A stretch of DNA of 25,321 bases from Macrostomum lignano (taxonomy: Eukaryota): positions 1 to 25,321 of the forward strand of contig NIVC01005128.1 in assembly GCA_002269645.1 (NCBI GenBank), in the 5' to 3' direction. Shown here one piece after another: positions 1-24,718 of this stretch (positions are counted from its first letter, which is position 1; every line of letters begins with the position of its first letter). The notes below the pieces were generated by a model. The model saw only the letters and a list, made by a program, of their open reading frames with translations. It was not told where the DNA came from and did no database searches. The translations under genes were made by a program, and so were the position numbers.

Positions 1-743
1 ACATTAAAACAAATGAATGGCTAAAACAAATTATTCGCATCATTAAAAACAAAATATTATTCAGTAAAACAAATTTACGAATTAAAACAAATCATACGGT
101 ACTTATTATTTTGGCGGGAATTTAATTTCGGGAAACACAAACTAATTTTCTAGAATAAACATAAGCCCTTCTACAATATATCTTTTTTATATAGTTAAAT
201 TGCTGTTGGCAAAGCTATATATTTTAAAATTTCATTTTTATCCTTACATTTTTCATTTTATGTTAGTGGATTCCATAGTCAGGAAGGTGGCAAGTGCACG
301 CGGGAATCAATTTATGGAAAAATCCTTGGTGCACGCCAATGTACACCAATTTTTTAAAACCCTTAACATGACGTTTCTGTTGCATGCCAAAAATCTTGAA
401 TACCAAAAATCATGTACGCCGAAAATTGTAGTATACCGTATTAGATACTATTTTTAAATAAATTTTCTACTTACGTTAAACAAAGTTTATATATAGAAAA
501 AGGAAATTCGCTTCAAAGAACATAGTGAGTATCAAAAACTTTTTCTTCACATTTCAAGAAACAAATAAACTAAAAGTCTACAAGAGTCACAAAATAAGAG
601 CGTTTAAAAGTTATTAGATATTTTAATTTTAATGTTGGCTAGTAGAGTGTAGGCCTGGACTGTACGCATTTGTTTCCCCATTGATATTCGCATTGATATT
701 CGAATTTTAACAAAAGCAAAATACTAAAAGCAACCCGTAGCAT

Positions 744-3700
744 GAAACTTTACACAGAGTAAACTGCAACCGTGAAACGACTATTGGTCAAGTTTCAGCT
801 CGATATGTAACTTTGGCTCTGAGCAGGAGCGATTTTCGATGTGTTCCATTTAAAATACATGTGATTCCAAAATTCGTATTGATATTCGAGTACAGGTACT
901 TCTGCTTCACTGATCTTGACGAAACTTTACACAGAGTAAACTGCAACCGTGAAACGACTATTGGTCAAGTTTCAGCTCGATATGTAACTTTGGCTCTGAG
1001 CAGGAGCGATTTTCGATGTGTTCCATTTAAAATACATGTGATTCCAAAATTCGTATTGATATTCGAGTACAGGTACTTCTGCTTCACTGATCTTGACGAA
1101 ACTTTACACAGAGTAAACTGCAACCGTGAAACGACTATTGGTCAAGTTTCAGCTCGATATGTAACTTTGGCTCTGAGTAGGAGCGATTTTCGATGTGTTC
1201 CATTTAAAATACATGTGATTCCAAAATTCGTATTGATATTCGAGTACAGGTACTTCTGCTTCACTGATCTTGACGAAACTTTACACAGAGTAAACTGCAA
1301 CCGTGAAACGACTATTGGTCAAGTTTCAGCTCGATATGTAACTTTGGCTCTGAGCAGGAGCGATTTTCGATGTGTTCCATTTAAAATACATGTGATTCCA
1401 AAATTCGTATTGATATTCGAGTACAGGTACTTCTGCTTCACTGATCTTGACGAAACTTTACACAGAGTAAACTGCAACCGTGAAACGACTATTGGTCAAG
1501 TTTCAGCTCGATATGTAACTTTGGCTCTGAGTAGGAGCGATTTTCGATGTGTTCCATTTAAAATACATGTGATTCCAAAATTCGTATTGATATTCGAGTA
1601 CAGGTACTTCTGCTTCACTGATCTTGACGAAACTTTACACAGAGTAAACTACAACCGTGAAACGACTATTGGTCAAGTTTCAGCTTGATATGTAACTTTG
1701 GCTCTGAGCAGGAGCGATTTTCGATGTGTTCCATTTAAAATACATGTGATTCCAAAATTCGTATTGATATTCGAGTACAGGTACTTCTGCTTCACTGATC
1801 TTGACGAAACTTTACACAGAGTAAACTGCAACCGTGAAACGACTATTGGTCAAGTTTCAGCTCGATATGTAACTTTGGCTCTGAGCAGGAGCGATTTTCG
1901 ATGTGTTCCATTTAAAATACATGTGATTCCAAAATTCGTATTGATATTCGAGTACAGGTACTTCTGCTTCACTGATCTTGACGAAACTTTACACAGAGTA
2001 AACTGCAACCGTGAAACGACTATTGGTCAAGTTTCAGCTCGATATGTAACTTTGGCTCTGAGCAGGAGCGATTTTCGATGTGTTCCATTTAAAATACATG
2101 TGATTCCAAAATTCGTATTGATATTCGAGTACAGGTACTTCTGCTTCACTGATCTTGACGAAACTTTACACAGAGTAAACTGCAACCGTGAAACGACTAT
2201 TGGTCAAGTTTCAGCTCGATATGTAACTTTGGCTCTGAGTAGGAGCGATTTTCGATGTGTTCCATTTAAAATACATGTGATTCCAAAATTCGTATTGATA
2301 TTCGAGTACAGGTACTTCTGCTTCACTGATCTTGACGAAACTTTACACAGAGTAAACTGCAACCGTGAAACGACTATTGGTCAAGTTTCAGCTCGATATG
2401 TAACTTTGGCTCTGAGCAGGAGCGATTTTCGATGTGTTCTATTTAAAATACATGTGATTCCAAAATTCGTATTGATATTCGAGTACAGGTACTTCTGCTT
2501 CACTGATCTTGACGAAACTTTACACAGAGTAAACTGCAACCGTGAAACGACTATTGGTCAAGTTTCAGCTCGATATGTAACTTTGGCTCTGAGTAGGAGC
2601 GATTTTCGATGTGTTCCATTTAAAATACATGTGATTCCAAAATTCGTATTGATATTCGAGTACAGGTACTTCTGCTTCACTGATCTTGACGAAACTTTAC
2701 ACAGAGTAAACTGCAACCGTGAAACGACTATTGGTCAAGTTTCAGCTCGATATGTAACTTTGGCTCTGAGCAGGAGCGATTTTCGATGTGTTCCATTTAA
2801 AATACATGTGATTCCAAAATTCGTATTGATATTCGAGTACAGGTACTTCTGCTTCACTGATCTTGACGAAACTTTACACAGAGTAAACTGCAACCGTGAA
2901 ACGACTATTGGTCAAGTTTCAGCTCGATATGTAACTTTGGCTCTGAGCAGGAGCGATTTTCGATGTGTTCCATTTAAAATACATGTGATTCCAAAATTCG
3001 TATTGATATTCGAGTACAGGTACTTCTGCTTCACTGATCTTGACGAAACTTTACACAGAGTAAACTGCAACCGTGAAACGACTATTGGTCAAGTTTCAGC
3101 TCGATATGTAACTTTGGCTCTGAGCAGGAGCGATTTTCGATGTGTTCCATTTAAAATACATGTGATTCCAAAATTCATATTGATATTCGAGTACAGGTAC
3201 TTCTGCTTCACTGATCTTGACGAAACTTTACACAGAGTAAACTGCAACCGTGAAACGACTATTGGTCAAGTTTCAGCTCGATATGTAACTTTGGCTCTGA
3301 GTAGGAGCGATTTTCGATGTGTTCCATTTAAAATACATGTGATTCCAAAATTCGTATTGATATTCGAGTACAGGTACTTCTGCTTCACTGATCTTGACGA
3401 AACTTTACACAGAGTAAACTGCAACCGTGAAACGACTATTGGTCAAGTTTCAGCTCGATATGTAACTTTGGCTCTGAGCAGGAGCGATTTTCGATGTGTT
3501 CCATTTAAAATACATGTGATTCCAAAATTAATATTGATATTCGAGTACAGGTACTTCTGCTTCACTGATCTTGACGAAACTTTACACAGAGTAAACTGCA
3601 ACCGTGAAACGACTATTGGTCAAGTTTCAGCTCGATATGTAACTTTGGCTCTGAGCAGGAGCGATTTTCGATGTGTTCCATTTAAAATACATGTGATTCC

Positions 3701-4765
3701 AAAATTCGTATTGATATTCGAGTACAGGTACTTCTGCTTCACTGATCTTGACGAAACTTTACACAGAGTAAACTGCAACCGCGAAACGACTATTGGTCAA
3801 GTTTCAGCTCGATATGTAACTTTGGCTCTGAGCAGGAGCGATTTTCGATGTGTTCCATTTAAAATACATGTGATTCCAAAATTAATATTGATATTCGAGT
3901 ACAGGTACTTCTGCTTCACTGATCTTGACGAAACTTTACACAGAGTAAACTGCAACCGTGAAACGACTATTGGTCAAGTTTCAGCTCGATATGTAACTTT
4001 GGCTCTGAGCAGGAGCGATTTTCGATGTGTTCCATTTAAAATACATGTGATTCCAAAATTAATATTGATATTCGAGTACAGGTACTTCTGCTTCACTGAT
4101 CTTGACGAAACTTTACACAGAGTAAACTGCAACCGTGAAACGACTATTGGTCAAGTTTCAGCTCGATATGTAACTTTGGCTCTGAGCAGGAGCGATTTTC
4201 GATGTGTTCCATTTAAAATACATGTGATTCCAAAATTCATATTGATATTCGAGTACAGGTACTTCTGCTTCACTGATCTTGACGAAAATTTACACAGAGT
4301 AAACTGCAACCGTGAAACGACTATTGGTCAAGTTTCAGCTCGATATGTAACTTTGGCTCTGAGCAGGAGCGATTTTCGATGTGTTCCATTTAAAATACAT
4401 GTGATTCCAAAATTCATATTGATATTCGAGTACAGGTACTTCTGCTTCACTGATCTTGACGAAACTTTACACAGAGTAAACTGCAACCGTGAAACGACTA
4501 TTGGTCAAGTTTCAGCTCGATATGTAACTTTGGCTCTGAGCAGGAGCGATTTTCGATGTGTTCCATTTAAAATACATGTGATTCCAAAATTCGTATTGAT
4601 ATTCGAGTACAGGTACTTCTGCTTCACTGATCTTGACGAAACTTTACACAGAGTAAACTGCAACCGTGAAACGACTATTGGTCAAGTTTCAGCTCGATAT
4701 GTAACTTTGGCTCTGAGCAGGAGCGATTTTCGATGTGTTCCATTTAAAATACATGTGATTCCAAA
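744..4765 (+). repeat. Left arm: 177-bp tandem array, about 22.7 units
   Basis: Unit phase TTGGCTCTGAG recurs at 813, 990, 1167 ... 4707 with an exact 177-bp period and only scattered substitutions. The array ends at GATTCCAAA (4765). Confidence 0.98.
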
Positions 4766-7274
4766 CAACAACAACAACAACAGAGTACGCTGCCAGTTCG
4801 CAAAAGCAGCGTCAGATGGCGCGCTTCGAAGCTTGGGCGCGAACAAAGGCCGCACCGCCGGCAGAGTCCGGGGTGCCGGCGTAAGCCAGCAGACAGTCGA
4901 CGTAGCGCCGAGTCCTCGCCTGTCCCCGCCGGTAGGGTGCCTGCAACGTAAGTAGCAGCACCTCCTGCACCGGCTCCGGACAGTAGGCCTCGGTGCGGAT
5001 GACGTGGCCTGCTAGCTGGAGTCGCCGACGGCGCAGCAGATCGCTAGGACGGGCCAGGCCGGCGCGATGATAGAGCGCCGTGTTGGTGACTCGCTCGTTG
5101 CCGATCTTGAAGGCGGCGCGCAGCAGGCCAGCGTGCGCCGCGTCGACTTGAGCCTCGAGCGAGTCTATCAGCGTCCAGGTCTCGGCGTTGTATAACAGGA
5201 CGGTCTCGATCACCGCCTGGAACAGCGCCGCCCTCTGGCGGTCCGGTAGGGCCTCGGACTGCAGGACTGACCTTATAGAACGAAAGGCAGCCCAGGCAAG
5301 TCCTCGGCGACGCCGCAGATCCTCGCGGACGTCGGGAACCAGACCGCCGAGGTAGACGAACTGCTGACATCTTGGAAGCTCACTCGCCTGTCCATCAGCG
5401 CCTCGGCAGAAGATTGCAGCCTCGGTGTCGTCCGGCACGCATAGCACGACGGTCTTCTGCGTGTTGACCACCAGGCCGACGCTCGCCGCAACGGCAACCA
5501 GTCTATCCAGCTGTCGTTGGGCGCCCTCGAGGGCGAGGTCATCGGCGTAGCCAAGCACGCTGAGCCGTCTCTCCGGTTGGCGTCGACCCACGCGTCGCCG
5601 CAGCAGGAAGCCGTCGTCGTTGGAAGGCAGAGCAGTCCGTAGCACCCAGTCAAGCACCAGAATAAATAGGAACGGCGCTAGCGTATCTCCCTGGAGCACC
5701 CCGGAGGATGTCTCGAAGAAATCCGATAGGCCGTCCGGTGTTTAGACAGCAGCCGTCGTGCCGTGATATAGCGCCATGACAGCAGAAATCAGCAGGTCTG
5801 GCACGTTGTACGCACGGAGCACCTCTGGGAGCGCGTCCCTCACGACCGAGTCGAAGGCCTTCCTGAAATCGACGAAGATCAGGATCAGGGTCAACTGGCG
5901 GATGCGCGCCTCCTCGATGACTCGCCGAAGAGCCAGGATCTGCGTCACTGTGCCGCGATGGGCCGGAATCCGTTCTGCTCAGGCCACAGGTACGGGTCCA
6001 GCACAGTCTGTAACCGCGATAGCAGCATGCGGTTGAACAGCTTCGCGGCGCAGGACTGTAGGCAGATGCCTCGATGCTCCTCGAGCTTGGTGGTGCCCGG
6101 CTTCTTTGGAATGGCGACGATGTGCGCCGTGGTCCATTCGTTTGGCGCCACCTCACCGGAAAGCACGCGGTTCATCACTCTGGCGACCTGAGTGGCCACG
6201 CAGTGGATCCGCAGCGCCTCGGTGGGCACCTCGTCTGGACCAAGCGCTTTGCCGCCCGGCGACTGCCGAGCGAACTTCACAACGTCGGCTGTGCTGACTG
6301 GGGCAACGTTGAAGCTCTCCTCCGCCGGCAACGGCGTCTCCGGCGGCAGCCTCAGATTTTCTGGAAGCGGAGGGGGCGGCGCGTTGACAATGGCGGCGAA
6401 GAACTCGCGCAGCTCGTTCCTGCGCTCATCCGGAATGTCGCCTGCTTGGTTGAGCGCGATGCGCCGCTTTCGCCCCGTCAGAGTGTTGATGACGGACCAG
6501 GCCACGCGCCCTCTGGCATCGGGCCCTGCGGCAGAGACGGCTTGGATGGCGTCATCGACAGCGGACTGCTGCCGCTGCAGGTAGACAGCCGCCAGAGCCT
6601 CCTCCGCCTCACGAGTTTGCCGCCCACTCAGACGGAGCCTCTCCAGATCTTCCCTCGCTTCGTCGATCGCGGGGTCGTCCTGCCAGACCGGCTGCCCGCG
6701 CTGGGCCGGTCGCATCAGCGGGACTGCTTGCTCCGCAGCGGCTCGAACTGCAGCGCTCACCTCCGCGTACTCGGCTCCTCCACGCTTGTCGCCCAGCGCA
6801 GTGACAAAGACACCGGCAAAGCGACGCCGCGTCTCGGCGTCCCTGAGCGCGCGGTAGCAGCGCCGCGGTGGCCGCTTTGGCGGACGGTAGAGCGGGTCCC
6901 GAAGCCGAAGGTCGCAGATGAGCAGCCGATGGTCGGACAGCAGAGCCAGCGGCGTAATGGTGCGGCAGTTGGTGACGCGGCGGCACTCACGAAAGCGCAT
7001 AAGCACGTGGTCGAGCTGTGCCAGCCTCCGCGTAGCGTTCCGGCCGCGCGCGTTCCGCCGCCTCTGCTTGCAGCCGACGAAGGTCGCGAGCCTGCCCGGT
7101 GACTTGCGGAATCTGGTGTTGGCCGACACCATGTCCTGTCTCTCCAGGAAGTCCTCTAGCGCTCCGGTGTTGCCGTTCTCGCGAGCTGTCACAAACAGCG
7201 ATCGCTCGGACCTACGCAGAACTGCGTTCAGGTCTCCGAGAATGACCACTGTGTCACGTTGCGCCATCTCCTCC
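4764..7274 (-). mobile_element. 5'-truncated RTE-clade-like non-LTR retrotransposon (LINE), inactivated
   Basis: Minus-strand AP-endonuclease motifs (ILGDLNA, LDHVL, SDHR) are followed by RT motifs (EQNGFRP, FVDFRKAFDSV, QGDTLAPFLF, YADD, FVYLGG) and an RTE-type C-terminus (LLYNAETWTL, RRRRLQLAGHVIR). The 3' UTR after the stop at 4812-4814 is about 30 nt, then a (GTT)6 tail (AAC x6 at 4764-4781 on +). Clade assignment rests on motif recognition, not a phylogeny. Confidence 0.9.
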
Positions 7275-7276
7275 AC
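4812..7276 (-). pseudogene. Disrupted endonuclease-reverse transcriptase ORF
   Basis: Three ORF-track pieces join up: 7276-5945, 5948-5742 and 5699-4812. A 1-nt frameshift near 5958 restores GFRP-H-RGTVTQILALRR, and there is an in-frame TAA at 5742-5744. The N-terminal part of the endonuclease is missing. Confidence 0.88.
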
Positions 7277-8667
7277 CTGTACTCGAATATCAATATGAAT
7301 TTTGGAATCACATGTATTTTAAATGGAACACATCGAAAATCGCTCCTGCTCAGAGCCAAAGTTACATATCGAGCTGAAACTTGACCAATAGTCGTTTCAC
7401 GGTTGCAGTTTACTCTGTGTAAAGTTTCGTCAAGATCAGTGAAGCAGAAGTACCTGTACTCGAATATCAATATGAATTTTGGAATCACATGTAATTTAAA
7501 TAGAACACATCGAAAATCGCTCCTGCTCAGAGCCAAAGTTACATATCGAGCTGAAACTTGACCAATAGTCGTTTCACGGTTGCAGTTTACTCTGTGTAAA
7601 TTTTCGTCAAGATCAGTGAAGCAGAAGTACCTGTACTCGAATATCAATATGAATTTTGGAATCACATGTATTTTAAATGGAACACATCGAAAATCGCTCC
7701 TGCTCAGAGCCAAAGTTACATATCGAGCTGAAACTTGACCAATAGTCGTTTCACGGTTGCAGTTTACTCTGTGTAAAGTTTCGTCAAGATCAGTGAAGCA
7801 GAAGTACCTGTACTCGAATATCAATATGAATTTCGGAATCACATGTATTTTAAATGGAACACATCGAAAATCGCTCCTGCTCAGAGCCAAAGTTACATAT
7901 CGAGCTGAAACTTGACCAATAGTCGTTTCACGGTTGCAGTTTACTCTGTGTAAAGTTTCGTCAAGATCAGTGAAGCAGAAGTACCTGTACTCGAATATCA
8001 ATACGAATTTTGGAATCACATGTATTTTAAATGGAACACATCGAAAATCGCTCCTGCTCAGAGCCAAAGTTACATATCGAGCTGAAACTTGACCAATAGT
8101 CGTTTCACAATTGCAGTTTACTCTGTGTAAAGTTTCGTCAAGATCAGTGAAGCAGAAGTACCTGTACTCGAATATCAATATTAATTTTGGAATCACATGT
8201 ATTTTAAATGGAACACATCGAAAATCGCTCCTGCTCAGAGCCAAAGTTACATATCGAGCTGAAACTTGACCAATAGTCGTTTCACGGTTGCAGTTTACTC
8301 TGTGTAAAGTTTCGTCAAGATCAGTGAAGCAGAAGTACCTGTACTCGAATATCAATACGAATTTTGGAATCACATGTATTTTAAATGGAACACATCGAAA
8401 ATCGCTCCTGCTCAGAGCCAAAGTTACATATCGAGCTGAAACTTGACCAATAGTCGTTTCACGGTTGCAGTTTACTCTGTGTAAAGTTTCGTCAAGATCA
8501 GTGAAGCAGAAGTACCTGTACTCGAATATCAATACGAATTTTGGAATCACATGTATTTTAAATGGAACACATCGAAAATCGCTCCTGCTCAGAGCCAAAG
8601 TTACATATCGAGCTGAAACTTGACCAATAGTCGTTTCGCGGTTGCAGTTTACTCTGTGTAAAGTTTC
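7275..8667 (-). repeat. Right arm: inverted 177-bp tandem array, about 7.9 units
   Basis: Reverse complement of the left-arm unit with the same 177-bp period. The inner end ACCTGTACTCG at 7275 abuts the LINE 5' end. Confidence 0.98.
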
Positions 8668-10161
8668 ATGCTACGGGTTGCTTTTAGTATTTTGCTTTTG
8701 TTAAAATTCGAATATCAATGCGAATATCAATGGGGAAACAAATGCGTTGGACTGTAGGCTAGGCTGTAGCCTCAACTAGTTGGTTTAATGAATATTCAAA
8801 TTCAATTGTTCACGTTTAACTTTATATATTGTATATATATAGTGTATACATCTATATTTGACTTGTTGATATACTGTCAGTTTGTATTTGCACGCCAAGG
8901 TTACACGCCAAGTAAAAAACTTATACGCTGAAAATTTAGGCGTGGCTTGAGACCCCTATTTGCACGCCAACTTTGCACACCAAAATTTTAGCGTGGCTTG
9001 TGCACGCGGGAAAATTCCCGCGTGCAGGCCACCTTCCTGAGTATGAAGTGGATTCCATATTTGATTTTGTATTTTACCATTCTGCTGCTAATTCTACGTT
9101 TTACTATGCTATTCCATTCTGATTCCCCTGTGGATTCCACATTTTACCGGGTACCATATATTAGGCCTAGCAAATACAGATAATTTGTTCAAAACTTTAG
9201 AGCAATGCTAGACCTGTGCCATGGAGGATTTAGTAAAAAAAATTCACATTTTAAGCAATTTTTGCACTTTGGATAGAAAGACTTGGATTTAGAAAATTTT
9301 AAAATAGCCTATGTTAGATGTCACTTTCTATATATGTTCATTTTTATGCTTAGTATATCATGGCCATAAGATAAAGATAGTCTCGACTCTCTTACTAGGC
9401 CAGCCCTAGGCTTACTATAAATGTAAATTTTGAATTTTATAATTTAAGCATATTTGAATGGCAATAAGGCAGGACTACTAGCTATATAGTAACAAGCTTA
9501 TTTGACTAAAGGCAAGCTAGTGCTAGCTAAATAGTAGAAAAATTTTATGGGCAATAGGCCCAGCTGGCTAGCTAGAGTTTTGGCACCACAACACAACTCA
9601 TTTTCTAAGTTCTAATGGCTATGGATCTGGCAGTGCTATATAGAACTTAAAAAATATTTTAAAAGATTAAAAAGACTAGGCCTAATAAGAATATGGCTTA
9701 TATCTATTTAAAATTCAACATTAAAAGTATCTCCTTTCAAATCTTGAGACTCATCATCTAGTCTTAAATCTTATCTAGAACAAAGTCTCAATTTCTGCCA
9801 CTTATAGAAAAACTATACTCCAGAAGGCATAGATCATGCTGAAAAATTCTGGCATGCATTTAGTTTAGCCTAAAATTGTAGCATGCATTGGCATATATTT
9901 GGGTATTGTATGCCAAAAGTGGCATGTTGGCATGCTATGGCATAGAAATAGCAGGCATAATAATAGTGAGGCATATTTTTTAAGACAAAAGTTCATGAAA
10001 AGACTTTGTATTGTGAAATGAAGACAAGAATTCATACTTATTTTTATTGCAAAATAACAAGTAAATTTTATTGTGCCAAAAAAAGTTATTTACTTAGTAT
10101 ATTTATTATTTGCATGCTACAATAGTTTTAAAAAATGTTGAAGACTCAATAACATGATCTA

Positions 10162-10333
10162 CATACATGTGCAAATTTGGGAATCACCCGGCCATTTCTA
10201 TTGGCAACATACACATGTAAGTCGCTATTGGCTGAGAGCAGTCACGTGACTACTATTCCGTCCAATAGCAACTTACATGTGTGTGTTGCCAATAGAAATG
10301 GCCGGGTGAATCCCAACGTTGCGCCCAAGCATG
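10162..10333. mobile_element. Palindromic MITE, copy 1 (CATAC...CATG ends, 8-bp TSD)
   Basis: Long inverted arms (GGCCATTTCTATTGGCAAC... / ...GTTGCCAATAGAAATGGCC). TSD ATGATCTA at 10154-10161 and 10334-10341. Two more copies in the window. Confidence 0.9.
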
Positions 10334-11301
10334 ATGATCTAGACTATAGTAGAAAAACAATATTGAAGAATGTTCCTAATATTATAATAGCCTTGCCAGA
10401 TCTATAGCTATTAGAAAATGAGTTCTAGTGCCAGAACTCTAGCCAGTGCCATTATTTTTACTAGTATAGCTATATGGGCTAAATAAACACTGTTATTTAT
10501 ACTAAACTATATAATTTTTTAATATATAGCCTCCAAGCTAAAATATAAATTTTCACATTTGAAGCTAGCTAGGACCAATCTCAAATGGGATTAGCCTAAG
10601 TCTAAGAAGCATAGCATAATAATCTATAAAGTACTACTACTGACAGTAGGCACAAGCGCTATAAATAGGCCATGAAAGATGAGGCCCCTACTGCAAGTCC
10701 CTAAAGTAGAGTAGAAATGTTTGTATTTTGATTGATTTTAATGCAATGAAATAGTTTCTCCTATATTAGATATATATTACCTTGTATGCTTATGACTATG
10801 TTCTAATAAATATAAAATGCTAGTACTAGTCATAATGATTATATTGGCTATTGAATGCTTAAAAATCTAGCTCTTTTACTTTGAGTAGACTAGTGTAGTG
10901 AAAGTCCTTTTACTTGTCAATATTAATTATTATATATAGCTAGAAGTAAATTTTATTAAAAGTAGTTTTGCAAATAAATAGGAGCCTAACTTTGCAATGC
11001 AATTACATATATTAGAAGCCTGCTTAGACCTGAAAGCCATATTTAATTTGGTAATTGTGATTTTGGTTTTAACATTTTACTGTAAGCATAGCCTTGCAAC
11101 TTAGTATATAAAACGAGTCCATTACTAAAATTTGTTTGAATGAAGGGCTATTGCTATGCTTCCAGATTTATACTTCTACACACATTTAAAGTACACTATT
11201 ATGTGCCAGTGCATAACAACTTTTTAATGCATTTCAATGTCTTGTTTATATTCATGTAACAACCAACTGTCCAGCCAACCAGACAGAGCCCAGTCATCTC
11301 C

Positions 11302-11643
11302 ATGGCAACCAGAGCTGGTGGTGATGCCACCTACTCGGTGAATGACAAGGCTAAGCCAGGCTTCATTCGGGTCTCCTTTGACCTGCCAGGTCTGAAGAAG
11401 GGCCTGCTAGATGGCAGCAAAAATGCCAAGAAGACTAGCAATTCAACCCTGAATGTGTCAATCGCGCCTGGCTCAGCTCACTTTGGCAGCGTGTCAATCA
11501 AAGGCCAGACGAAAGGTCACGTGATTGAGTACCAGCTACGCGCTGATCCCTCCGAGCTGCTCGGCGCGTGGCTTGGCTCCCCGCCCAGCTACTATGAGGT
11601 TGAGCAGGGAGTCCTGAGGGTCTTTCTCAAGCTAGCTGATTGA
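11302..11643 (+). CDS. 113-aa protein with possible HSP20-like chaperone (alpha-crystallin/CS) fold
   Basis: ATG-to-TGA ORF in a GC-rich island within AT-rich flanks. IRVSFDLPGLKK near the N-terminus and EQGVLRVFLK at the C-terminus resemble the DLPG and GVL-x-V motifs of alpha-crystallin domains. AATAAA at about 11880. It may be only the last exon of a longer gene. Confidence 0.55.
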   Translation: MATRAGGDATYSVNDKAKPGFIRVSFDLPGLKKGLLDGSKNAKKTSNSTLNVSIAPGSAHFGSVSIKGQTKGHVIEYQLRADPSELLGAWLGSPPSYYEVEQGVLRVFLKLAD

Positions 11644-12250
11644 TTGGATTTTTAATGATAGGATGTGCAATTGTGTCTTTGAAATTAGCAGTTAGAAATT
11701 GCAAGCTAGCTAGACATTTATTGACCATATTCGTCGCTAGTAGATTTATGTTATTATTTCTGCTATTAAGCGTCCATGAATATTATTGTATTTGTCATGC
11801 TTATCGGTTTATTAAAATATAAAGTTATTTTACTATGATCTATATTTATAAAATTTTGTTTGTCTGCTGTTTTGCCGCTAATAAAAATCAGTTGTTGCTG
11901 TATAATCGGCAAGTGATTTGCTTTTGTTTATTTATCCCAAACAAGCAAGGCTCGCTTCCACCGCCATGCCATCAGATGCAGTCAGGTCAGATTTTGTGTG
12001 ATTTCGCAGAATTTCTAAATTGAAGTTCAAGATTTATTTCTACATTTAGTCGTGTGATTTGATGGCAGTGTGAATCAACTTTTAATGTGTCGCTTTCACT
12101 AGCTGGCAATTTGACAGCAGGATAAATTTGTTCAAGTTGTGAGCTAGGGGAAGCGCCTGTAGCAGCGGTCGGCAAACCTTTTTTACCTCAAGGGTTAGAT
12201 TAAGACAGGTGAGAGAGGAAAGGAGAGGGGAGCGGCTGGAGAGGAGCTCG

Positions 12251-12623
12251 AGGGAGACGCTAGAGAAGAGGGAGACGCTAGAGAAGAGGAGGAGGCTAGA
12301 GAAGAGGGAGACGCTAGAGAAGAGGGAGACGCTAGAGAAGAGGAGGAGGCTAGAGAAGAGGGAGACGCTAGAGAAGAGTGGAAGGCTAGAGAAGAGGGAG
12401 ACGCTAGAGAAGAGGGAGACGCTAGAGAAGAGTGGAAGGCTAGAGAAGAGTGGAAGGCTAGATAAGAGGGAGACGCTAGAGAAGAGGGAGACGCTAGAGA
12501 AGAGTGGAAGGCTAGAGAAGAGGGAGACGCTAGAGAAGAGTGGAAGGCTAGAGAAGAGGGAGACGCTAGAGAAGAGGGAGACTCTAGAGAAGAGGGGAGG
12601 CTAGGGAAGAGTGGAGATGCTAG
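12251..12623 (+). repeat. 18-bp purine-rich minisatellite (GAGAAGAGGGAGACGCTA and variants), about 20 units, within a GA-rich tract 12207-12884
   Basis: Three alternating variants are visible: GAGAAGAGGGAGACGCTA, GAGAAGAGTGGAAGGCTA and GAGAAGAGGAGGAGGCTA. Confidence 0.92.
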
Positions 12624-13790
12624 ATAAAAAACGAAGGCTAGTGAGGCTAGTGAGGCGGGAGAAAAAAAGAGGAGACTATAGAACGGAAAAGGGGGCGAGG
12701 TGAGAGAGAAAAGCGGTGGGGAGAGGCGATAGAGAAGAGAGGTGAGGGTACAGAAATGAGAGAAGACAATACAACATGTAAGAGGATAAGTAAGATGGGA
12801 AATGAAATTAAAGCAGAGAATTGTGAAGAGAGAGAAAAGAAAGAAGCTGATGAGATGGATCAGAGAAGAGCTAAGAAGAGACACGTCAAACCTTGAGCGA
12901 GCGAATTGCTATTGTGGAGTTTCAATAAAGTACCCGAGGGCCGGATAGAGAGGCTTCGTGGGCCGCATGTGGTCTATAGCAACTCCTAATCAAGGACTTC
13001 TAGACTAGCAGGACGTAAAACTCAAAGATCGTGTAAATTTTTAGGAGGACGATTTCCTGGAAAAAATACACTGCGGAGATAGGAGCAAATCATTTTTTCA
13101 TCACAAAATCAATGATTGCATTTGATCTAAGGCAGCTAAGATAACCATTCTTTTTATTTAGCACGCACAACATGTTACTCTATTATATTTTAATGTAGTT
13201 GTGTCTTGAAAGTTTCATCTTCATATTATTTTCTTTTTATTTCATAAGCCCCAAGTTGCAAAATACTCACAAGTGGCATTAGCCGAACTTTGTATTTTTC
13301 CTTTTTAAAATCAAGTATATTTGCAATAAAAATGCTGCATTACGGTACTATTAAGCCATTATTGTAGGTATAATTCCATTTCAATGTAGTAACTATACTA
13401 ATAGACCTGTCTATGTAGTTAAATATATAAGGACAATATTTACAATATGCCCCCACCATTTTCATTTTTCTTGTTTTACCTAGGCCTCAAGTCTTTAGAA
13501 AGCTATCAGTTTTTACCTGAAAGCCAGACAGAAAAAAATGGTTAGGGCCTAGGCCTAGTCACAAAAATGGGCACTAACCTTTTTTCTAGGTTTTTACACT
13601 TTTAATTAGGCTTAGATTTTTAATTTTTTATTGCAAATTTGAATACACTATACTATATAAACTAGGCCTAGCACCCAGCTGGTTTAGGTTTACCTTCCTT
13701 GAATTATATATTTTGTTGAATATAATACCTTTAAAATTGCAATTTTAGTTTGTAATGGTATATTTCATATCATATTTGAATCATAGGCCT

Positions 13791-13969
13791 CATACATGCG
13801 CAACCTTGGGAATCACTCGGCCATTTCTATTGGCAACACAGAACACACACATGTAAGTTGCTATTGGATGGAATAGTAGTCACGTGATTGCTCTCAGCCA
13901 ATAGCAACTTATATATGTGTGTTGCCAATAGAAATGGCCGGGTGAATCCCTAGGTTGCACCCAAGCATG
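13791..13969. mobile_element. Palindromic MITE, copy 2 (nested in the 4.86-kb element)
   Basis: Same family as 10162-10333. TSD ATAGGCCT at 13783-13790 and 13970-13977. Confidence 0.9.
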
Positions 13970-15129
13970 ATAGGCCTAATTATTAGATTATTATGATAGG
14001 TCTTTTATTATAAACTAAAAAATGGGTAATACAATACTGCATGCCCACATTTATCTTAACTTTAGCATTTATTTACTATTGAAACTAGGCCTAGGCCTTA
14101 TTGCACTCATAAAGCTTTGAAACTAGGAATATTTAGGCCTATTCATTTTACTACCTTATATCTATTTATAAAACTAAGCTGGCTCTAATAATTGACAATG
14201 AAAATCTAGTTTTTAGTATTAATTTAAAATTTGTTTATTAATTTAGTTATCTATATTCAGTTTTAATTTTATTTTTATAGGTAAATATGATTTTTTAATT
14301 AGTATTATTTAATAACTTAGATTTTGGCTATTAGGGTCTAATCCAAATACTAAATAGTACTTAGATGTCTAATTGTTACATTTTTATTCAATAATCTTTA
14401 ATTTTACTATAAGTATTTTGTACCAATATATTATCCTATCATCTATCTTAATAGATAGATAGTTATCATGCCAATTAAATTTTTGGTAGTAACTTACACT
14501 AGCAACCATTTTAGACAAAAGGCTGCAAAATCTAATCTTGTTAGATTTCAAACAGATTTCCTTATGATATAAATTATGTCTAGCATTGTATTTGACATAC
14601 TTAATCCTTTGATCTTTCATGTGCCTATCTGACTTCAGTGGAAATTTTTGCAAAGCATCAACCTGCTAAAATGCCATTGCACAAGATGATATACTTTTGG
14701 ATACCAATTAAAGTGATCCACAAAGTGTCTTTCCTGACACCACAAGGTCTTCATTACATTTGACTTTAGCAAGTGAGTAAATTTTCTAAATGTTGTTTTT
14801 TTTAATATATGGATAAGGGTTAGTAAAAAGCAAGGGTCAATGTGGTTGGGGCAAAAGATGATATATCCTTACCTTTTACATGGCTAGTTTCCCTAAATTT
14901 ATGATGGCATAGTTTGTAGCAAAATTTATGGTATAACCTTTTAGGAAAGTTCATTCCAATAAAAAGACAAAATTTCTCATTTTACCATTGCCCATACCTA
15001 CCAACATTTTAGTGTGGTGGATGGACTCCAGCACTAGGCCTATTGCTCATCATTGCAGCACTCAAGTCAAAGTTTTGCATTTTTGGGCTTCCAATATCAA
15101 CTAGAGCGATAGTCTCAATTGGAGGCCAT

Positions 15130-15360
15130 GGAAAGCAATCTCAAGCATGCTGGTAGAGCCTGGTGCCAACCTTGGAAAGAATTTGGAGCCCACCTGATTG
15201 TTAATCATTTTTCATCTGGCAGCTGCAACTGAGCATTGGAAATGGAATTCACTATATCTATAACTGGCCAGCGGGAACTGCACACTGAGAAGCAATGCCC
15301 ATGTCCTTCACCCCACATAACATTGAGGTCTCACTTTAGTGGTCTTAGCGATGTAGGATG
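15130..15360 (-). pseudogene. Possible decayed P-element/THAP9-type transposase C-terminal remnant
   Basis: Minus-strand fragments in different frames, KIASYIAKTTKVRPQC and about 40 codons later QSGGLQILSKVGTRLYQHA*DCF, loosely resemble the YIAG...C-x-x-C and RGGL-x-x-PS motifs of P transposases. Many stops and weak similarity. Confidence 0.3.
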
Positions 15361-15733
15361 CGATCTTCATAGACATGCCATTGAACCTGATCTGCTATGC
15401 CACATCTCAAGAAAGCTGACTAATGTTTTAAGGGTATAGTGCGGCAAGACTGAGTCTGATAGATAGTCCAATTTCAGCCACTGTAGGCCGACTGTGCAAA
15501 ATTAATTGAAGCAAATAAGCTTCATGGTACTTGCTAATTTGCCAATTTTTTCTCTTTTTAAATACTGATATCTGCTTTTCTGTTTAGTTTAGCTACAAGT
15601 TGCGCAGCCATTGGAGCTAAGGCCGCCCACGCATTGCCTGGATGTAGTGCTCCTCACTAACCCCGTGCATAAAACTCCACATGGCCATGACAATCCAACT
15701 GCACTGTTAGTTCCACAAAAAAATTCTATGCCG

Positions 15734-15903
15734 CATACATGCGCAACCTGGGGAATCACTCGGCCGTTTCTATTGGCAACACACATGTAAGTCGCTATTG
15801 GCTGAGAATAGTCACGTGACTACTATTCCATCCAATAGCAACTTACATGTGTGTGTTGCCAATAGAAACGGCCGGGTGAATCCCTAGGTTGCGCCCAGGC
15901 ATG
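15734..15903. mobile_element. Palindromic MITE, copy 3 (nested in the 4.86-kb element)
   Basis: Same family. TSD CTATGCCG (15726-15733) versus CTATGCCT (15904-15911), a 7/8 match. Confidence 0.88.
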
Positions 15904-18900
15904 CTATGCCTGGTAAACACTTAACACTACACTGCTGGTTATTATACTCATATTTCGACCTCCAAATTAAGCCAAGCCTTTACAGTATTTAAATTTACTT
16001 TTCTGATTTACTTTTGATTTACTTCATAGATACAAGTACCATGTCATACAAAATATTTACTCAATTTTGCCCTTGCAGTTGCATATTATGAGCTGTGCAT
16101 CTTTGTGCCTGGTTTATTTTTCCATTTCTGAAACATCAAACATTGCAAAAAACCAATTCAAAAACAAAGAACATTTTCTATTTTCTACATCAGTATGTAT
16201 AAAGAATGTATCTATACATTGCTCTTTTAATGTTTCAATGCACTGTATATATATTATAAATTACATCTTACATTCTTTGCAAGTCAAAACAGTTGAAAGT
16301 TCACATTTCAGATCTGTGAAACAAAATAAAATTCATTTGAAATGAAAAAAAGTCTTGTCTTTTTTATTTACTAAGGTGAAAGAGAAGTTATTAACTTTGA
16401 GTTATTTATAAGAAAGACATCACCAGCAAAAATTAAGGTAGTGCCAATGAGTCTTGAAGTGCTAGTGTCAGCCAGCAAGCAGTTAAAGAACTGCAGTTGC
16501 TCATCTTGAATGCAGTGCACAGTAGAATAGCCTCAAAGCTTGATGTTGTCTGGTTACTAGAGCACAGCAATCTTCTGTATGTTGACAACCAAACCAATTG
16601 CCAGCACAAAACCAACCAGCCTGCCTAGCTTTTTGGGTGGCAGGCTAGGTCACTGAGTTGTGACAAGTGAGCAGGACATGGAATGCCATAATGCAATCAT
16701 TAGGTTGATCAAACATGAAGCATTGGCCAATACACAGCTAGTAGATAAGCTCAGAATGTAGGCTGAAAATCAGGCAGTGGCAATTGAGGCTTGTTGCTGG
16801 CAGCTGAAACAAAATATGTTGAAATATAAAGAATTTAATTGTTCAGGGTTAATGCAAAAATAAATATTATCAAAGGTTGTCAATTGTATTTTAATATATA
16901 AGTCAACATAAAAAAAAAGCTAATACATAAGCAAAAGGTACAAAAATTCAATTAGAAGTTTTACTACTATATGATGTAAATTTTTAGCTAAAAAAGTAAT
17001 TTAAACTTAAAATAGTACACATATAAAACTATTTTAACAAATTCCTTTTTCTTAAACTATTATTTAACATTTACCTTTTCTAACGACTACTAATCTATTT
17101 ATTTTGTTAATTATTAATGCAAATATATTTCTTATTAACACATTTTAACCTATAAAACTTGCAATTTAATAATAATAATAATAATAATATTAAAAGTTAA
17201 ATACTAAAAAAATCTAGAATATTTCTTATAGATAGGCCTACTTAGTAAAAATGGTTAGAGCTTGTTTTTGTGCCTAGGTCTATATGACTATATTCTTGTC
17301 CTATATATGCAGGTCTAGCTTAAAAAACTGATAGCTTTCTAAAGACTTGAGGCCTAGGTAAAACAAGAAAAATGAAAATGGTGGGGGCATATTGTAAATA
17401 TTGTCCTTATATATTTAACTACATAGACAGGTCTATTAGTATAGTTACTACATTGAAATGGAATTATACCTACAATAATGGCTTAATAGTACCGTAATGC
17501 AGCATTTTTATTGCAAATATACTTGATTTTAAAAAGGAAAAATACAAAGTTCGGCTAATGCCACTTGTGAGTATTTTGCAACTTGGGGCTTATGAAATAA
17601 AAAGAAAATAATATGAAGATGAAACTTTCAAGACACAACTACATTAAAATATAATAGAGTAACATGTTGTGCGTGCTAAATAAAAAGAATGGTTATCTTA
17701 GCTGCCTTAGATCAAATGCAATCATTGATTTTGTGATGAAAAAATGATTTGCTCCTATCTCCGCAGTGTATTTTTTCCAGGAAATCGTCCTCCTAAAAAT
17801 TTACACGATCTTTGAGTTTTACGTCCTGCTAGTCTAGAAGTCCTTGCTCCTAATTACTCTTGCGGCACTCTGAGGCACCGCGCCCTGTGGCATTGTCTCA
17901 ACGCCTTACTGGCTGAAAATGTGAAAGGCTTTTAATTGTTGTTTAAGTCAGCCCGATCACTCTGAAGCTCTGGCTTGAAATTGAGGCATTGTCATGGCTT
18001 CAACGCTTGAAATTGTTGTTTCTTCTCCAAGGTGTACAGGATGACATGCAGCGTCACAGGGCCAAATATTGCGGCAGCAACGCCAATTACAAGAAACTAC
18101 TGCATGGAAATTTAATGTTTCAGCCATGCTTTCAAGCAGCTGCGAGCGCGCTACTGTACATGCAGCTGTGACTGCAGTTCAGACTTATGGCAGCGACTCT
18201 CTGGAAGGAGCTGGTGCCAATCCGACGGGTGGGTCAGGGCGTCGACATGCATGGGTTTATTAGTGATGGGGGGGACGTGCCACAAATTGCATAAGGTTAG
18301 CCAAAAATGATCTACATGTACATGTACACATGTAAATTACTATAAATTCTTGCATATAATTTACATGTACACTTTTTCAGAATCGCAGTGTTGTCACTTG
18401 AATAGCAATTGTTTAGTGTCGCAGACAGATCTAGGCGCTATTTTGTCGCCCTGAAGCAATCATCACCGCGGTCACACAAATATGTGGGGTACGTGGGCCG
18501 TAGTCAACTTTCAACTTTTCTTGTTTATTTTTTCAGCATCAAACCGTCCAGGCCAACCCCTTAATAAATTTCTGGGTGCGCCACTGGGTGTAAAGTGGAA
18601 ACTAAGGAACGGCGGAGCGAAGGACGTGCAGTGGAATTTTTGATTGTATAATACTTGGAGCTAAATAAACCTCCCAAGTTCGGCAAAAATTATGATTTTT
18701 TACTTAATATTTTAATACTTCTGCAAAATTGTCAATAAATTTTAATTTCAATAACTACTTTACGATTCATTAGTAGAAATGTTTGTATAAGATTTTGTTT
18801 TAACTGGTATATTTGCATTTAAATTTGCTTCTCAACAACAGATTTTTTGTCATGAAGTCTAGCTAGCGTTATGCGCTGAGGGGCAGAGACGATAAATTCT

Positions 18901-22184: not shown

Positions 22185-22589
22185 GTAAGTATATTTATTG
22201 TTCTCTAACAAAATTCTCATTTCTATAAGATAGGTACTTTGTCTTTCTTGAGAAAGAAGAAAGTTTATCCAACTTTAAGTAATTTGTTCACCTATTTCCT
22301 AAGAGATAGTGTACTTTTCTTCTTATAAAAATCTTTGAATGCTGTCTATATGTGCATTTTTTTAAATTGGAAGCAGATAGAAAGCAAATGTTTGCTAATG
22401 TGGTATATGGGTTTCTTGTTAAATTTGATTAACTTGAGAGAAGCAATATTGCGCCATTGGAGAAGTTGATGGCTTAGTGAAGCTAGCCTTCATAAAGATT
22501 TTCTAAGAAACAAAGCGTCATCATTGATCTCCCAATTGGACTTCCATCTGTCGTCCATCTCTTCAAGAGGCAGTATTTACTTTGAACAG

Positions 22590-23356
22590 GCCCCCAGCCC
22601 GCTGCCCCTACGACAGCCGCCTGTTTCGCTCCATTATCAATCGCCACTTCGAGTCCAGCGACTCTCTGCCGCAGTCATCATCGCAGCAGCAGCAGCAGCG
22701 GCGGCAAAGCTCTGGAAGCAGCTGTCGGAGCCGTCGAAGTCAGGCACCAGCTGACCGACTCAGCGGCGGCAGCGGCGGACTTGCCGACGTCAGCAACGGC
22801 TCCATCTCAAGCTCGTTGCATCGTCGGGAATCGTCGCGCAGCGCTATGCTAGTCCAGCGAAGCCTTCGCGAGCTGATGCGCCAGCAGTCGCTGAGCCAGC
22901 AACAGCAGCAACAGTCCTTGGCTTCCAATCCAGTGTCTCGACGTGAATCCTCGCTGTCCATGGCTCCGCTTGATTCGGCGCCCAGATCGCCCTGTTTCAC
23001 AGTCAGGATGAGCTGATTGAGCATCTGGGCGGCTTGCTGACTGACCGCTGCCAGCAGCGACAGGTGCCCCAGGTCAAGACCGAAGATGATGCTGAGGAGG
23101 GGGTCAGGTTTTTTATTGGCTCCGATCGGACATCCTCGGCCGCTGCCGGCGACGCAGCAGCGCTGGCGAACTCCGCCCAGGCCGTGGCCGACTGCCTGCT
23201 GGGCCTGCCGCCGATGCCGCAGACTGAGCTGTCGCTAAGCGACATCACCGAGCATCAGAGAATTATTAAACGAAGCAGCGAATTAATCAATTTTGCTGTG
23301 CAGTGCCTTGATCAGGTCCAGCCGGCGGATTTAGGAGACGACGAGAAATGGACTAT
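22590..23356 (+). CDS. Large exon of an unidentified host gene (S/Q-rich low-complexity region then a helical region), with an apparent 1-nt frameshift near 22975
   Basis: GC-rich. TTTACTTTGAACAG acceptor and AT/GTAAGA donor. Frame 1 (RPPARCPYDSRLF...SMAPLD) joins frame 3 (FGAQIALFHSQDELIEHL...DDEKWT) if one T is added at GATTCGG. Confidence 0.65.
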
Positions 23357-23456
23357 GTAAGATCCCTTAGCGCTGGATGCTGACCTTTAATACCATTGTC
23401 CATGTAGGAATCTCTTTTGAATACAATATATTTATATCGTTTCTATTTGTGTACAG

Positions 23457-23553: not shown

Positions 23554-23739
23554 GTAAGCAAATTGTTGAAGACTTGGATTAATGTATTCGCCAACAGGCT
23601 GGGTCGATGTATTGTCAGTTGGGTCACATAGATCAATCTAGGCCAATAAAGGCTATTAGGTCAAATAAGATCATTGGTTAAATTTTAGTCTTAGGGTCAA
23701 TTTTATGTCTTTGTGGCATTTATTTCGGTCCTCTGGTCA

Positions 23740-24718
23740 ATATAGGCCATCGTGTCAATGCGGGTCATCAGGTCAATCTAGGTCATCATGTCAATCTAGG
23801 TCATCAGGTCAATCTAGGTCATCAGGTCAATCTAGGTCATCAGGTCAATCTAGGTCATCAGGTCAATGTAGGTCATCAGGTCAATCTTAGGTCATCAGGT
23901 CAATCTAGGTCATCAGGTCAATGTAGGTCAATCAGGTCAGTGTAAGTCAATCTAGGTCAATCATGTCAATCTAGGTCATCATGTCAATCTTTGTCATCAG
24001 GTCATCTAGTCAATCTGGGTCATCGGGTCAATCTAGGTCAATCTGGGTCATCAGGTCAATTTAGGTCAATCTGGGTCATCAGGTCAATCTAATGGTCAAT
24101 CTGGGTCATCGGTGTCAATCTAGGTCAATCTGGGTCAGTCATCGGGTCAATCTAGGTCAATCTGGGTCATCAGGTCAATCTAGGTCAATCTGGGTCATCA
24201 GGTCAATCTAGTCAATCTGGGTCATCGGTCAATCTAGGTCAATCTGGTCATCGCGTCAATCTAGGTCAATCTGGGTCATCAGGTCAATCTAGGTCAATCT
24301 GGGTCATCGGGTCAATCTAGGTCAATTCATCAGGCAATCTAGGTCAATCTGGGTCATCAGGTAAATCTAGGTCAATCTGGTCATCAGGTCAATCTGGGTC
24401 ATCAGGTCAATCTGGGTCATCAGGTCAATCTAGTCATTCAGTTTAACCTAGGTCATCAGTCAATCTAGGTCATTCAAGTTAATCTAGTCATCAGGTTAAT
24501 CTAGGTCATCAAGTCAATCTAGGTCACATCAATCTAGGTCATTCAGGTTAATCTAAGTCATCAAGTCAATCTAGGTCATTCAGGTCAATCTAGGTCATTC
24601 AGGTTAATCTATGTCATTCAGTTCATCAAGGTCAATCCTGGTCATTCAATCAATGTAGGTCATTCGGTCAATCTAGGTCATTCAGGTCAATCTAGGTCAT
24701 TCAGGTCAAAGGTCAATC
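23740..24718 (+). repeat. Intronic complex satellite of 8-10-bp RGGTCA-based modules (GGTCAATCTA, GGTCATCA, GGTCAATCTG, GGTCATTCA)
   Basis: Dozens of same-strand modules are visible, with a degenerate lead-in from about 23625. Confidence 0.93.

What the first reader, a model, noticed from the sequence alone, without database searches (positions are those of the whole stretch)
664..8747. Mobile element whose terminal inverted repeats are kilobase satellite arrays
Seen directly: identical 80-bp unique termini, an 8-bp TSD and two inward-facing arrays of a highly homogeneous 177-bp unit, with unequal arm lengths (4.0 versus 1.4 kb). Established: Drosophila FB, sea-urchin TU and Galileo have modular long TIRs. 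The ACGCATTTG terminus does not match the CA-type ends of P/hAT or the usual G-starting Mutator ends that I know. Inference: a possibly undescribed foldback family that moves satellite arrays around the genome as a unit.
Basis: partly seen in the sequence, partly recalled or inferred. Interest (0 to 1): 0.85.

Follow-up and report, generated by a model that had tools for sequence, protein, structure and literature searches.

The report
Foldback transposon with satellite arms, flatworm
This is a real foldback-type DNA transposon insertion in the flatworm Macrostomum lignano, with arms made of a 177-bp tandem repeat and a dead LINE retrotransposon at its centre; it is a well-known kind of element, apparently not yet described in flatworms.

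Summary
The 80-bp termini are identical and inverted (664-743, 8668-8747). An 8-bp target-site duplication, TGGACTGT, flanks them. Two inward-facing arrays of a 177-bp unit measure 4022 and 1393 bp and are about 99% homogeneous.

The window is contig NIVC01005128.1 of the Macrostomum lignano Mlig_3_7 assembly. Four other redundant contigs carry the same insertion with the same junctions. A palindromic assembly chimera is therefore very unlikely. The left arm has 22.7 units in two contigs and 13.7 in two others.

- The 2.5-kb GC-rich centre is a 5'-truncated, frame-broken RTE-like LINE without a target-site duplication.
- The element sits inside another small TIR element, and both are absent from a diverged paralogous locus.
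- An 11-mer, ATTGATATTCG, occurs twice in each terminus and once in every monomer.

The best reading is a non-autonomous foldback-like cut-and-paste transposon, structurally closest to Tetris, FB, Tm1 and Galileo. It encodes no transposase, and the superfamily is unresolved (an 8-bp TSD fits Mutator, P or hAT). Other genomic copies could not be searched with these tools, so "family" and "moves satellites around" remain inference. This is a new member of a known kind and of modest interest.

The parts
656..663 (.). Left copy of the 8-bp target-site duplication TGGACTGT
   Evidence: Read directly. Identical flanks are present in contigs L006 and L007.
664..743 (+). Left unique 80-bp terminus, starting ACGCATTTGTTTCCCC. 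It holds two copies of ATTGATATTCG, at 680-690 and 692-702.
   Evidence: 80/80 identical to the reverse complement of 8668-8747.
744..4765 (+). Left arm: 22.7 copies of the 177-bp monomer (39% GC), each with one ATTGATATTCG
   Evidence: Monomers carry 0-3 differences from the consensus. The arm has 13.7 units in contigs L006 and L007.
4766..7274 (-). Centre: 5'-truncated, defective RTE-like non-LTR retrotransposon (C-terminal part of the AP endonuclease plus the reverse transcriptase). The (TTG)n tail lies at 4766-4786, the ORF stop at 4812, and no TSD is present.
   Evidence: RVT_1 hits are split over frames. The closest relatives are Macrostomum lignano RT proteins, at up to 90% identity. 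tblastn aligns residues 110-934 of the 936-aa P0001, with a frameshift near 5958. An in-frame stop lies between ORFs 5742-5948 and 4812-5699.
7275..8667 (-). Right arm: 7.9 copies of the same 177-bp monomer, inverted
   Evidence: The copy number is the same in all five contigs.
8668..8747 (-). Right unique 80-bp terminus, with two ATTGATATTCG on the minus strand at 8709-8719 and 8721-8731
8748..8755 (.). Right copy of the TSD TGGACTGT
278..663 (.). Left half of the roughly 677-bp TIR element into which the foldback inserted (end ..GTCAGGAAGGTGGC..)
   Evidence: The paralogous locus L004 lacks window 278-9046.
8756..9046 (.). Right half of the host TIR element. The 12-bp direct repeat GTGGATTCCATA lies at 266-277 and 9047-9058.
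   Evidence: the 12-mer occurs once in L004 (around L004 7111-7123).

Best explanation
A non-autonomous foldback-like class II (cut-and-paste) transposon inserted into an intergenic TIR element of Macrostomum lignano. Its ends are 80-bp unique inverted termini, and each is followed by an array of a 177-bp monomer, so the whole arms form very long TIRs. It encodes no transposase and must have been moved in trans. The insertion made an 8-bp staggered cut, which produced the TSD TGGACTGT. Inferred: the transposase recognises the motif ATTGATATTCG (within ATTCGYATTGATATTCGA), present twice subterminally and once per monomer. Each arm would then be a row of binding sites, as shown experimentally for Galileo. 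Shown: after insertion the arms behaved as satellite DNA, with the left arm at 13.7 or 22.7 units in different contigs. Shown: an RTE-like LINE lies exactly at the arm-arm junction, with no TSD of its own. Inferred: the LINE was captured at, or with deletion across, the fragile centre of the palindrome, and it now acts as a stabilising spacer. My estimate for the superfamily is Mutator/Phantom-like about 45%, P-like about 20%, hAT about 20%, and other about 15%.
For: Structure and TSD. Clean insertion: the flanks are the two halves of another TIR element, and the whole nested pair is absent from paralog L004. Reproducibility: the termini, TSD, LINE junctions and right arm are the same in L002, L003, L006, L007 and the window. 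The assembly is known to be redundant (PMC5730564). Arm dynamics: 22.7 against 13.7 units, and the 81T variant occurs only in left units 3, 5, 9, 11 and 15. Motif: 34 matches inside the element and none elsewhere in the window, against 0.67 expected. Terminus and monomer share 17/18 bases, which 1 of 2000 shuffles reaches. No transposase: the only coding signal between the ends is the LINE. Precedents: Tetris has 220-bp repeats in its TIRs, TSDs of 8-10 bp and no ORF. Tm1 has TSDs of 8-10 bp. Galileo THAP sites lie in its TIR tandem repeats. MULE TSDs are 8-11 bp.
Against: Only one insertion site was seen. No second genomic copy, no exact empty site and no autonomous partner could be retrieved. 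The paralog lacks the host element too, so it does not by itself fix the foldback boundaries. The terminus ACGCA.. and the TSD do not show the usual hAT signatures, and nothing positively identifies Mutator or P. The role of the motif as a binding site is inference only. Copy-number differences between contigs could in part be PacBio assembly noise, since 1-bp indels are visible in L002 and L006.
Confidence: 0.8

Rival explanations
1. Assembly artefact: a palindromic chimera made by long-read or assembler errors, not a real inverted structure.
For: Mlig_3_7 is a PacBio/Canu draft with many errors and much redundancy. The window is a short 25-kb contig.
Against: The arms do not abut; 2509 bp of unique LINE sequence separates them. 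The arms differ in length and in variants. A direct, not inverted, 8-bp duplication flanks the unit. The flanks continue as the two halves of another TIR element. Five contigs share all the junctions, and they include at least three haplotype-like versions that differ in the second transposon and in left-arm length.
Confidence: 0.03
2. A local inverted duplication of a resident satellite array (template switching, or breakage and hairpin repair) rather than transposition of a foldback unit.
For: The LINE at the centre without a TSD and the out-of-phase inner ends (unit positions 128 and 154) show that repair or rearrangement happened at the centre.
Against: An inverted duplication would give inverted flanks, not a direct 8-bp TSD. 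It would also not end at the same base of an 80-bp unique sequence on both sides. The surrounding host element is otherwise uninterrupted, and the paralog has no array at all.
Confidence: 0.05
3. A composite of two independent one-armed elements (terminus plus array) that landed head-to-head around a LINE. They either sit there as two insertions or were mobilised once through their outer ends.
For: The arms differ greatly in length, and no shared register exists between them (13-19 mismatches at every offset).
Against: Two independent insertions would each have their own TSD, and neither inner end shows a terminus. One TSD brackets the whole unit. Both arms end inside a monomer at the LINE. 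If the pair moved through its outer ends it is functionally a foldback element anyway.
Confidence: 0.07

Closest known systems
Tetris (Drosophila virilis and D. americana foldback element; Dias et al. 2014, PMC4079207)
   Same: Both have a unique flanking domain at each end followed by tandem repeats of satellite-like unit size (220 bp against 177 bp here) inside long TIRs. Copy number in the arms is variable and allelic. Both have a middle domain without a transposase, TSDs of 8-10 bp, and a non-autonomous status with an unknown partner.
   Different: No sequence relationship was tested or is expected, since one host is an insect and the other a flatworm. The flanking domain here is only 80 bp (up to 866 bp in Tetris). 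The arms hold far more units (up to 22.7, against about 3-4 in the described complete Tetris copies). The middle here is entirely a LINE fragment. Free satellite arrays derived from the element were shown for Tetris but not here.
Drosophila melanogaster FB and Phantom-type Mutator foldbacks, including Tm1 of root-knot nematodes (PMC3169594)
   Same: All have composite TIRs of variable and unequal length built from tandem repeats behind short terminal motifs. Many copies lack coding capacity. TSDs are 8-10 bp.
   Different: The repeat units there are short (about 14 bp in Tm1; 10-31 bp in FB, from my own knowledge) against 177 bp here. The modal TSD is 9 bp against 8 bp here. A FLYWCH plus MULE transposase defines those families, and none is known for this element.
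Galileo (P superfamily, Drosophila; PMC3688188)
   Same: Both have long, internally repetitive TIRs. In Galileo a transposase-binding site near the end recurs in the TIR tandem repeats, which is the same layout as ATTGATATTCG here.
   Different: Galileo encodes a THAP/P-type transposase and makes 7-bp TSDs (my own knowledge). No transposase was found here, and binding was not tested.

Membership tests
Foldback-like transposons (structural class) | Long terminal inverted repeats built largely of tandem subrepeats behind a unique terminal sequence | tested here: met
   80-bp identical termini plus 177-bp arrays of 22.7 and 7.9 units
Foldback-like transposons (structural class) | Arms of unequal or variable length between ends and between copies or alleles | tested here: met
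   Arms of 4102 and 1473 bp. The left arm has 22.7 units in two contigs and 13.7 in two others.
Foldback-like transposons (structural class) | Target-site duplication that marks insertion of the whole unit | tested here: met
   TGGACTGT lies on both sides, and the flanks are halves of one TIR element
Foldback-like transposons (structural class) | Dispersed multi-copy family at unrelated sites | not testable with these tools
   No DNA search of eukaryotic assemblies is on offer. Exact-pattern scans of the metagenome, viral and prokaryote collections found nothing. About 45 kb of other M. lignano DNA held here has no copy.
Mutator / Phantom (FB, Tm1) | TSD of 8-11 bp, usually 9 | tested here: inconclusive
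   8 bp is inside the range but is equally typical of hAT and P
Mutator / Phantom (FB, Tm1) | MULE DDE transposase (with a FLYWCH finger in Phantom) in autonomous copies | not testable with these tools
   This copy holds only a LINE fragment. Autonomous copies could not be searched for.
hAT | 8-bp TSD | tested here: met
   TGGACTGT
hAT | Terminal YARNG and the TSD consensus nTnnnnAn (from my own knowledge of the superfamily) | tested here: not met
   The terminus is ACGCA, and the TSD has G at positions 2 and 7. By contrast the second element in the window (CAAGG.., TSD CTCCTAAT) fits both.
P superfamily / Galileo | THAP-domain transposase; 7-8 bp TSD; binding sites repeated in the TIRs | tested here: inconclusive
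   The TSD length is compatible and a repeated motif is present, but no transposase was found and no binding data exist
RTE-clade non-LTR retrotransposon (the central insert only) | A single ORF with an AP endonuclease followed closely by the RT, a very short 3' UTR and a simple-repeat tail | tested here: met
   Exo_endo_phos plus RVT_1 relatives of 930-1050 aa. Alignment to residues 110-934 of 936. A 25-nt 3' UTR and a (TTG)7 tail. Clade assignment by phylogeny was not done.

The most novel reading that the evidence does not exclude
This may be one copy of an undescribed flatworm foldback family whose 177-bp monomers each carry a transposase-binding site. Satellite arrays would then be transposition substrates themselves. 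The family would seed and disperse tandem arrays through the M. lignano genome, where simple and tandem repeats make up about 15%. LINE cDNA captured at the palindrome centre would act as a stabilising patch.
Probability: 0.2. Interest if true: 0.55.

Novelty: new member of a known kind. Interest (0 to 1): 0.3.

Why it matters
Foldback elements link transposons and satellite DNA, and they promote inversions and other rearrangements. M. lignano is a regeneration and transgenesis model with an unusually repeat-rich, recently duplicated and karyotypically unstable genome. A foldback family with kilobase palindromic arms could contribute to its assembly difficulties, its tandem-repeat load and its rearrangements. 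On present evidence this is a single, well-behaved example of a known architecture. Its value lies mainly in annotation (a repeat-library entry) and as a lead for a genome-wide survey.

Tried and rejected
1. Searched for other copies through translated satellite ORFs, because the monomer is 59 codons with one stop-free frame that gives a 1085-aa ORF. No protein matched. The open frame is not significant: 9.5% of shuffles have one.
2. Ran exact-pattern scans for the terminus and for a monomer 22-mer. Metagenome contigs (twice), viral contigs and prokaryote genomes all returned nothing. A phage BLAST also returned nothing.
3. Looked for an exact empty site. All four redundant contigs carry the insertion. 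The diverged paralog L004 lacks the host element as well. L004 has a TIR element nearby that shares only the 12 terminal bases with the host element.
4. Tested positional homology between the arms. No register stands out (13-19 mismatches at all offsets). I therefore dropped the idea that the right arm corresponds to a specific part of the left arm, although a few rare variants (5A, 30C, 104T) occur in both arms.
5. Ran tRNA and Rfam scans to test a SINE or RNA origin for the monomer. There were no hits.
6. Compared the monomer and the terminus with the rest of the held DNA. Only chance-level matches appeared.
7. Looked for a LINE target-site duplication. There is none: GATTCCAAA lies before 4766 and ACCTGTACTC after 7274.
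8. Searched the literature for flatworm foldbacks and M. lignano satellites. Nothing relevant turned up.
Full report
**What is in the sequence**

Tandem Repeats Finder reports two arrays of a 177-bp unit. One is at 744-4765 (22.7 copies, 99% matches). The other is at 7275-8667 (7.9 copies, 98%) and carries the reverse-complement consensus. The inverted-repeat search pairs 664-2136 with 7275-8747 (1473 nt, 99% complementary), and every other register of the left array pairs equally well.

The outermost 80 bp, 664-743 and 8668-8747, are not part of the satellite and are 80/80 identical as reverse complements. TGGACTGT lies immediately outside both ends, at 656-663 and 8748-8755. It is far beyond chance: an 8-bp match at two fixed positions has a probability of about 1.5e-5, and the arrays speak for themselves.

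The 2509 bp between the arms (4766-7274) are 58-66% GC, against about 38% in the arms. On the minus strand they encode the C-terminal part of an AP endonuclease and a reverse transcriptase. Pfam RVT_1 is split over three ORFs.

A protein search finds single-ORF elements of 930-1050 aa with Exo_endo_phos plus RVT_1. Among the named hits, all are Macrostomum lignano proteins, at up to 90% identity. tblastn aligns residues 110-934 of the 936-aa P0001 to 7279-4821, with a frame change near 5958. An in-frame stop separates ORFs 5742-5948 and 4812-5699.

The ORF stop is at 4812. A 25-nt 3' UTR follows, and then a (TTG)7 tail at 4766-4786 that abuts the left arm. This is a 5'-truncated, defective RTE-like LINE that fills the whole centre, so no other middle domain remains. 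It has no target-site duplication, and the arms end at different phases of the monomer (positions 128 and 154).

**Origin of the window and independent copies of the locus**

A small ORF downstream (11260-11643) is an annotated M. lignano protein cluster. Looking up its members showed that the window is the entire contig NIVC01005128.1 (25,321 bp) of assembly GCA_002269645.1, known as Mlig_3_7 (locus L005, 100% identical).

Four more contigs carry the same locus at 99.85-99.96% identity: NIVC01001907.1 (L002), NIVC01000785.1 (L003), NIVC01001729.1 (L006) and NIVC01005029.1 (L007). The assembly paper states that the sequenced DV1 line has extra chromosomes and that the assembly holds 180 Mb of duplicated blocks of at least 95% identity (PMC5730564). 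This redundancy is therefore expected.

All four contigs contain the right terminus, the right flank and the LINE tail junction. The two that reach the left end (L006, L007) show the same left flank and the same TSD. The contigs are not copies of a single consensus:
- L002 lacks a 4.9-kb transposon that the window, L006 and L007 carry.
- L006 and L007 have a left arm of 13.7 units, against 22.7 in the window and at least 19.7 in L003.
- The right arm has 7.9 units everywhere.

The 2.5-kb unique spacer, the unequal arms and the direct TSD add to this. Together they make a palindromic assembly chimera very unlikely.

**The insertion is clean and nested**

A sixth contig, NIVC01000642.1 (L004), is a diverged paralog of the region at 93-97% identity. 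This is consistent with the recent whole-genome duplication of this species (PMC5704211, abstract seen). It lacks window 278-9046 completely. L004 reads ..ttagtggattccata|tttgatt.., where the window has the 12-mer GTGGATTCCATA twice, at 266-277 and 9047-9058.

The extra DNA begins GTCAGGAAGGTGGC.. and ends ..GCCACCTTCCTGAG. It is a TIR element of about 677 bp, split by the foldback at its TGGACTGT. The order of events was therefore:
- divergence of the paralogs;
- insertion of the small TIR element;
- insertion of the foldback into it;
- arrival of the LINE, either before transposition or here;
- divergence of the present haplotype-like copies.

I could not obtain an exact empty site for the foldback itself. 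No other copy of the host element is in the DNA I could reach.

**Internal anatomy that bears on mechanism**

The 11-mer ATTGATATTCG occurs 34 times in the window, against 0.67 expected, and all 34 lie inside the element. There are two per 80-bp terminus, 12 bp apart and starting 17 bp from the tip, and one per monomer, always in the arm's orientation. The match extends to ATTCG[C/T]ATTGATATTCGA (17 of 18 bases), a score reached by 1 of 2000 shuffles of the terminus.

This is the layout found experimentally in Galileo. There the THAP domain binds about 70 bp from the end and again in the tandem repeats of the long TIRs, and the authors suggest this gives foldback-like elements their binding specificity (PMC3688188). 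I infer, but cannot show, that the motif is the transposase-binding site. I also infer that the monomer arose by duplication of subterminal sequence that contained it.

**The arms behave as satellite DNA**

Monomers differ from the consensus at 0-4 positions. The variant 81T occurs only in left units 3, 5, 9, 11 and 15, which suggests a 6-unit duplication. The two allelic forms differ by 9 units and in variant order. No register of the right arm against the left arm is best (13-19 mismatches at every offset). The arms are therefore homogenised rather than simple mirror images. Some differences between contigs may be PacBio consensus noise, since 1-bp indels are visible in L002 and L006.

**The LINE at the centre**

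A LINE that inserted at random into a 5.5-kb foldback would be flanked by same-orientation array on both sides. Here it sits exactly between the oppositely oriented arms and has no TSD. Either it was captured at the centre, or it inserted with a deletion that crossed the centre.

Long palindromes without a spacer are known to break at the centre and to be stabilised by a spacer. That is established knowledge from bacterial, yeast and mouse work, and it was not tested here. My inference is that the LINE is a repair patch or spacer, and that copies with a spacer are the ones that persist. The alternative is that the LINE fragment is the family's transported middle domain. Only other copies can decide between these.

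**Comparison with known elements**

The architecture is that of foldback elements. The closest published analogue is Tetris of Drosophila virilis. It has a unique flanking domain, then roughly 220-bp tandem repeats inside the TIRs, a non-coding middle, TSDs of 8-10 bp and allelic copy-number variation. Its repeats also form free satellite arrays (PMC4079207).

Tm1 of root-knot nematodes and Drosophila FB have the same plan with short repeat units, and they belong to the Phantom branch of Mutator. Galileo has the plan with a P-type transposase.

An 8-bp TSD fits MULEs (8-11 bp), hAT and P. The terminus ACGCA and the TSD TGGACTGT do not show the usual hAT signatures. The second transposon in the window shows both, which serves as a convenient internal control. 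With no transposase in hand the superfamily is unresolved. I lean towards Mutator/Phantom-like because most foldbacks are.

A full-text search found no foldback element described in flatworms and no description of this satellite. Repbase and Dfam could not be consulted.

**Verdict**

This is a real and well-supported foldback-like non-autonomous DNA transposon insertion in M. lignano. Three details add to the picture: a dead RTE LINE at the palindrome centre, nesting inside another TIR element, and a candidate binding motif in every monomer.

It is therefore a new member of a known kind. The claims that a family exists and that it spreads satellite arrays remain untested, because the tools give no DNA-level access to the rest of the genome.

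Noticed in passing
window 12991-17846: A second transposon of 4856 bp with perfect 524-bp TIRs, ends CAAGGACTTCTAG.., and the 8-bp TSD CTCCTAAT, which fits the hAT target pattern nTnnnnAn. It has no ORF above 92 aa. Contig NIVC01001907.1 (L002) has a clean empty site with a single CTCCTAAT, so the insertion is polymorphic between redundant copies of the locus and presumably recent.
   Followed up: yes
window 278-663 + 8756-9046 (direct repeat 266-277 / 9047-9058): A non-coding TIR element of about 677 bp (ends GTCAGGAAGGTGGC..) hosts the foldback. It is bounded by an unusually long 12-bp direct repeat, GTGGATTCCATA, and is absent from the paralogous locus L004. L004 has a different 673-bp element (L004 7251-7923) that shares only the 12 terminal bases (GTCAGGAAGGTG).
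   Followed up: partly
window 10150-10333, 13779-13969, 15722-15903: Three copies of a palindromic MITE-like unit of about 180 bp (arms GCGCAACC..GGGAATCAC.CGGCCATTTCTATTGGCAACACA), 76-94% alike. Two of them lie inside the hAT-like element.
   Followed up: no
window 1698-4955 (+) and 7228-8598 (-): The monomer is 59 codons long and has one stop-free frame, so the arrays read as ORFs of 1085 and 456 aa. No protein homologue was found, and 9.5% of shuffled monomers also have an open frame, so this is probably chance.
   Followed up: yes
window 12250-12624 and 23727-24709: There are two 18-bp minisatellites. One, GAGGGAGACGCTAGAGAA, has about 21 copies and strong GC and AT skew. The other, GGTCATCAGGTCAATCTA, has about 55 degenerate copies. 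L002 stops aligning to the window at 23634, just before the second one, which suggests a length difference between copies.
   Followed up: no
window 11260-11643 (+); 22582-23360 (+): A small annotated hypothetical gene (126-127 aa; PAA79294.1-like, no Pfam domain) is present on six contigs of the assembly. GC-rich (about 56%) exon-like ORFs with poly-Q lie at 22.6-23.4 kb, where the paralog L004 has an annotated 671-aa gene.
   Followed up: partly
L002, L003, L006, L007 vs window: Five contigs of Mlig_3_7 represent one locus at 99.85-99.96% identity. Two of them end inside or near the foldback arms (L002 starts at window 3130; L006 starts at window 589). This suggests that the long inverted satellite arms break the assembly.
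   Followed up: partly
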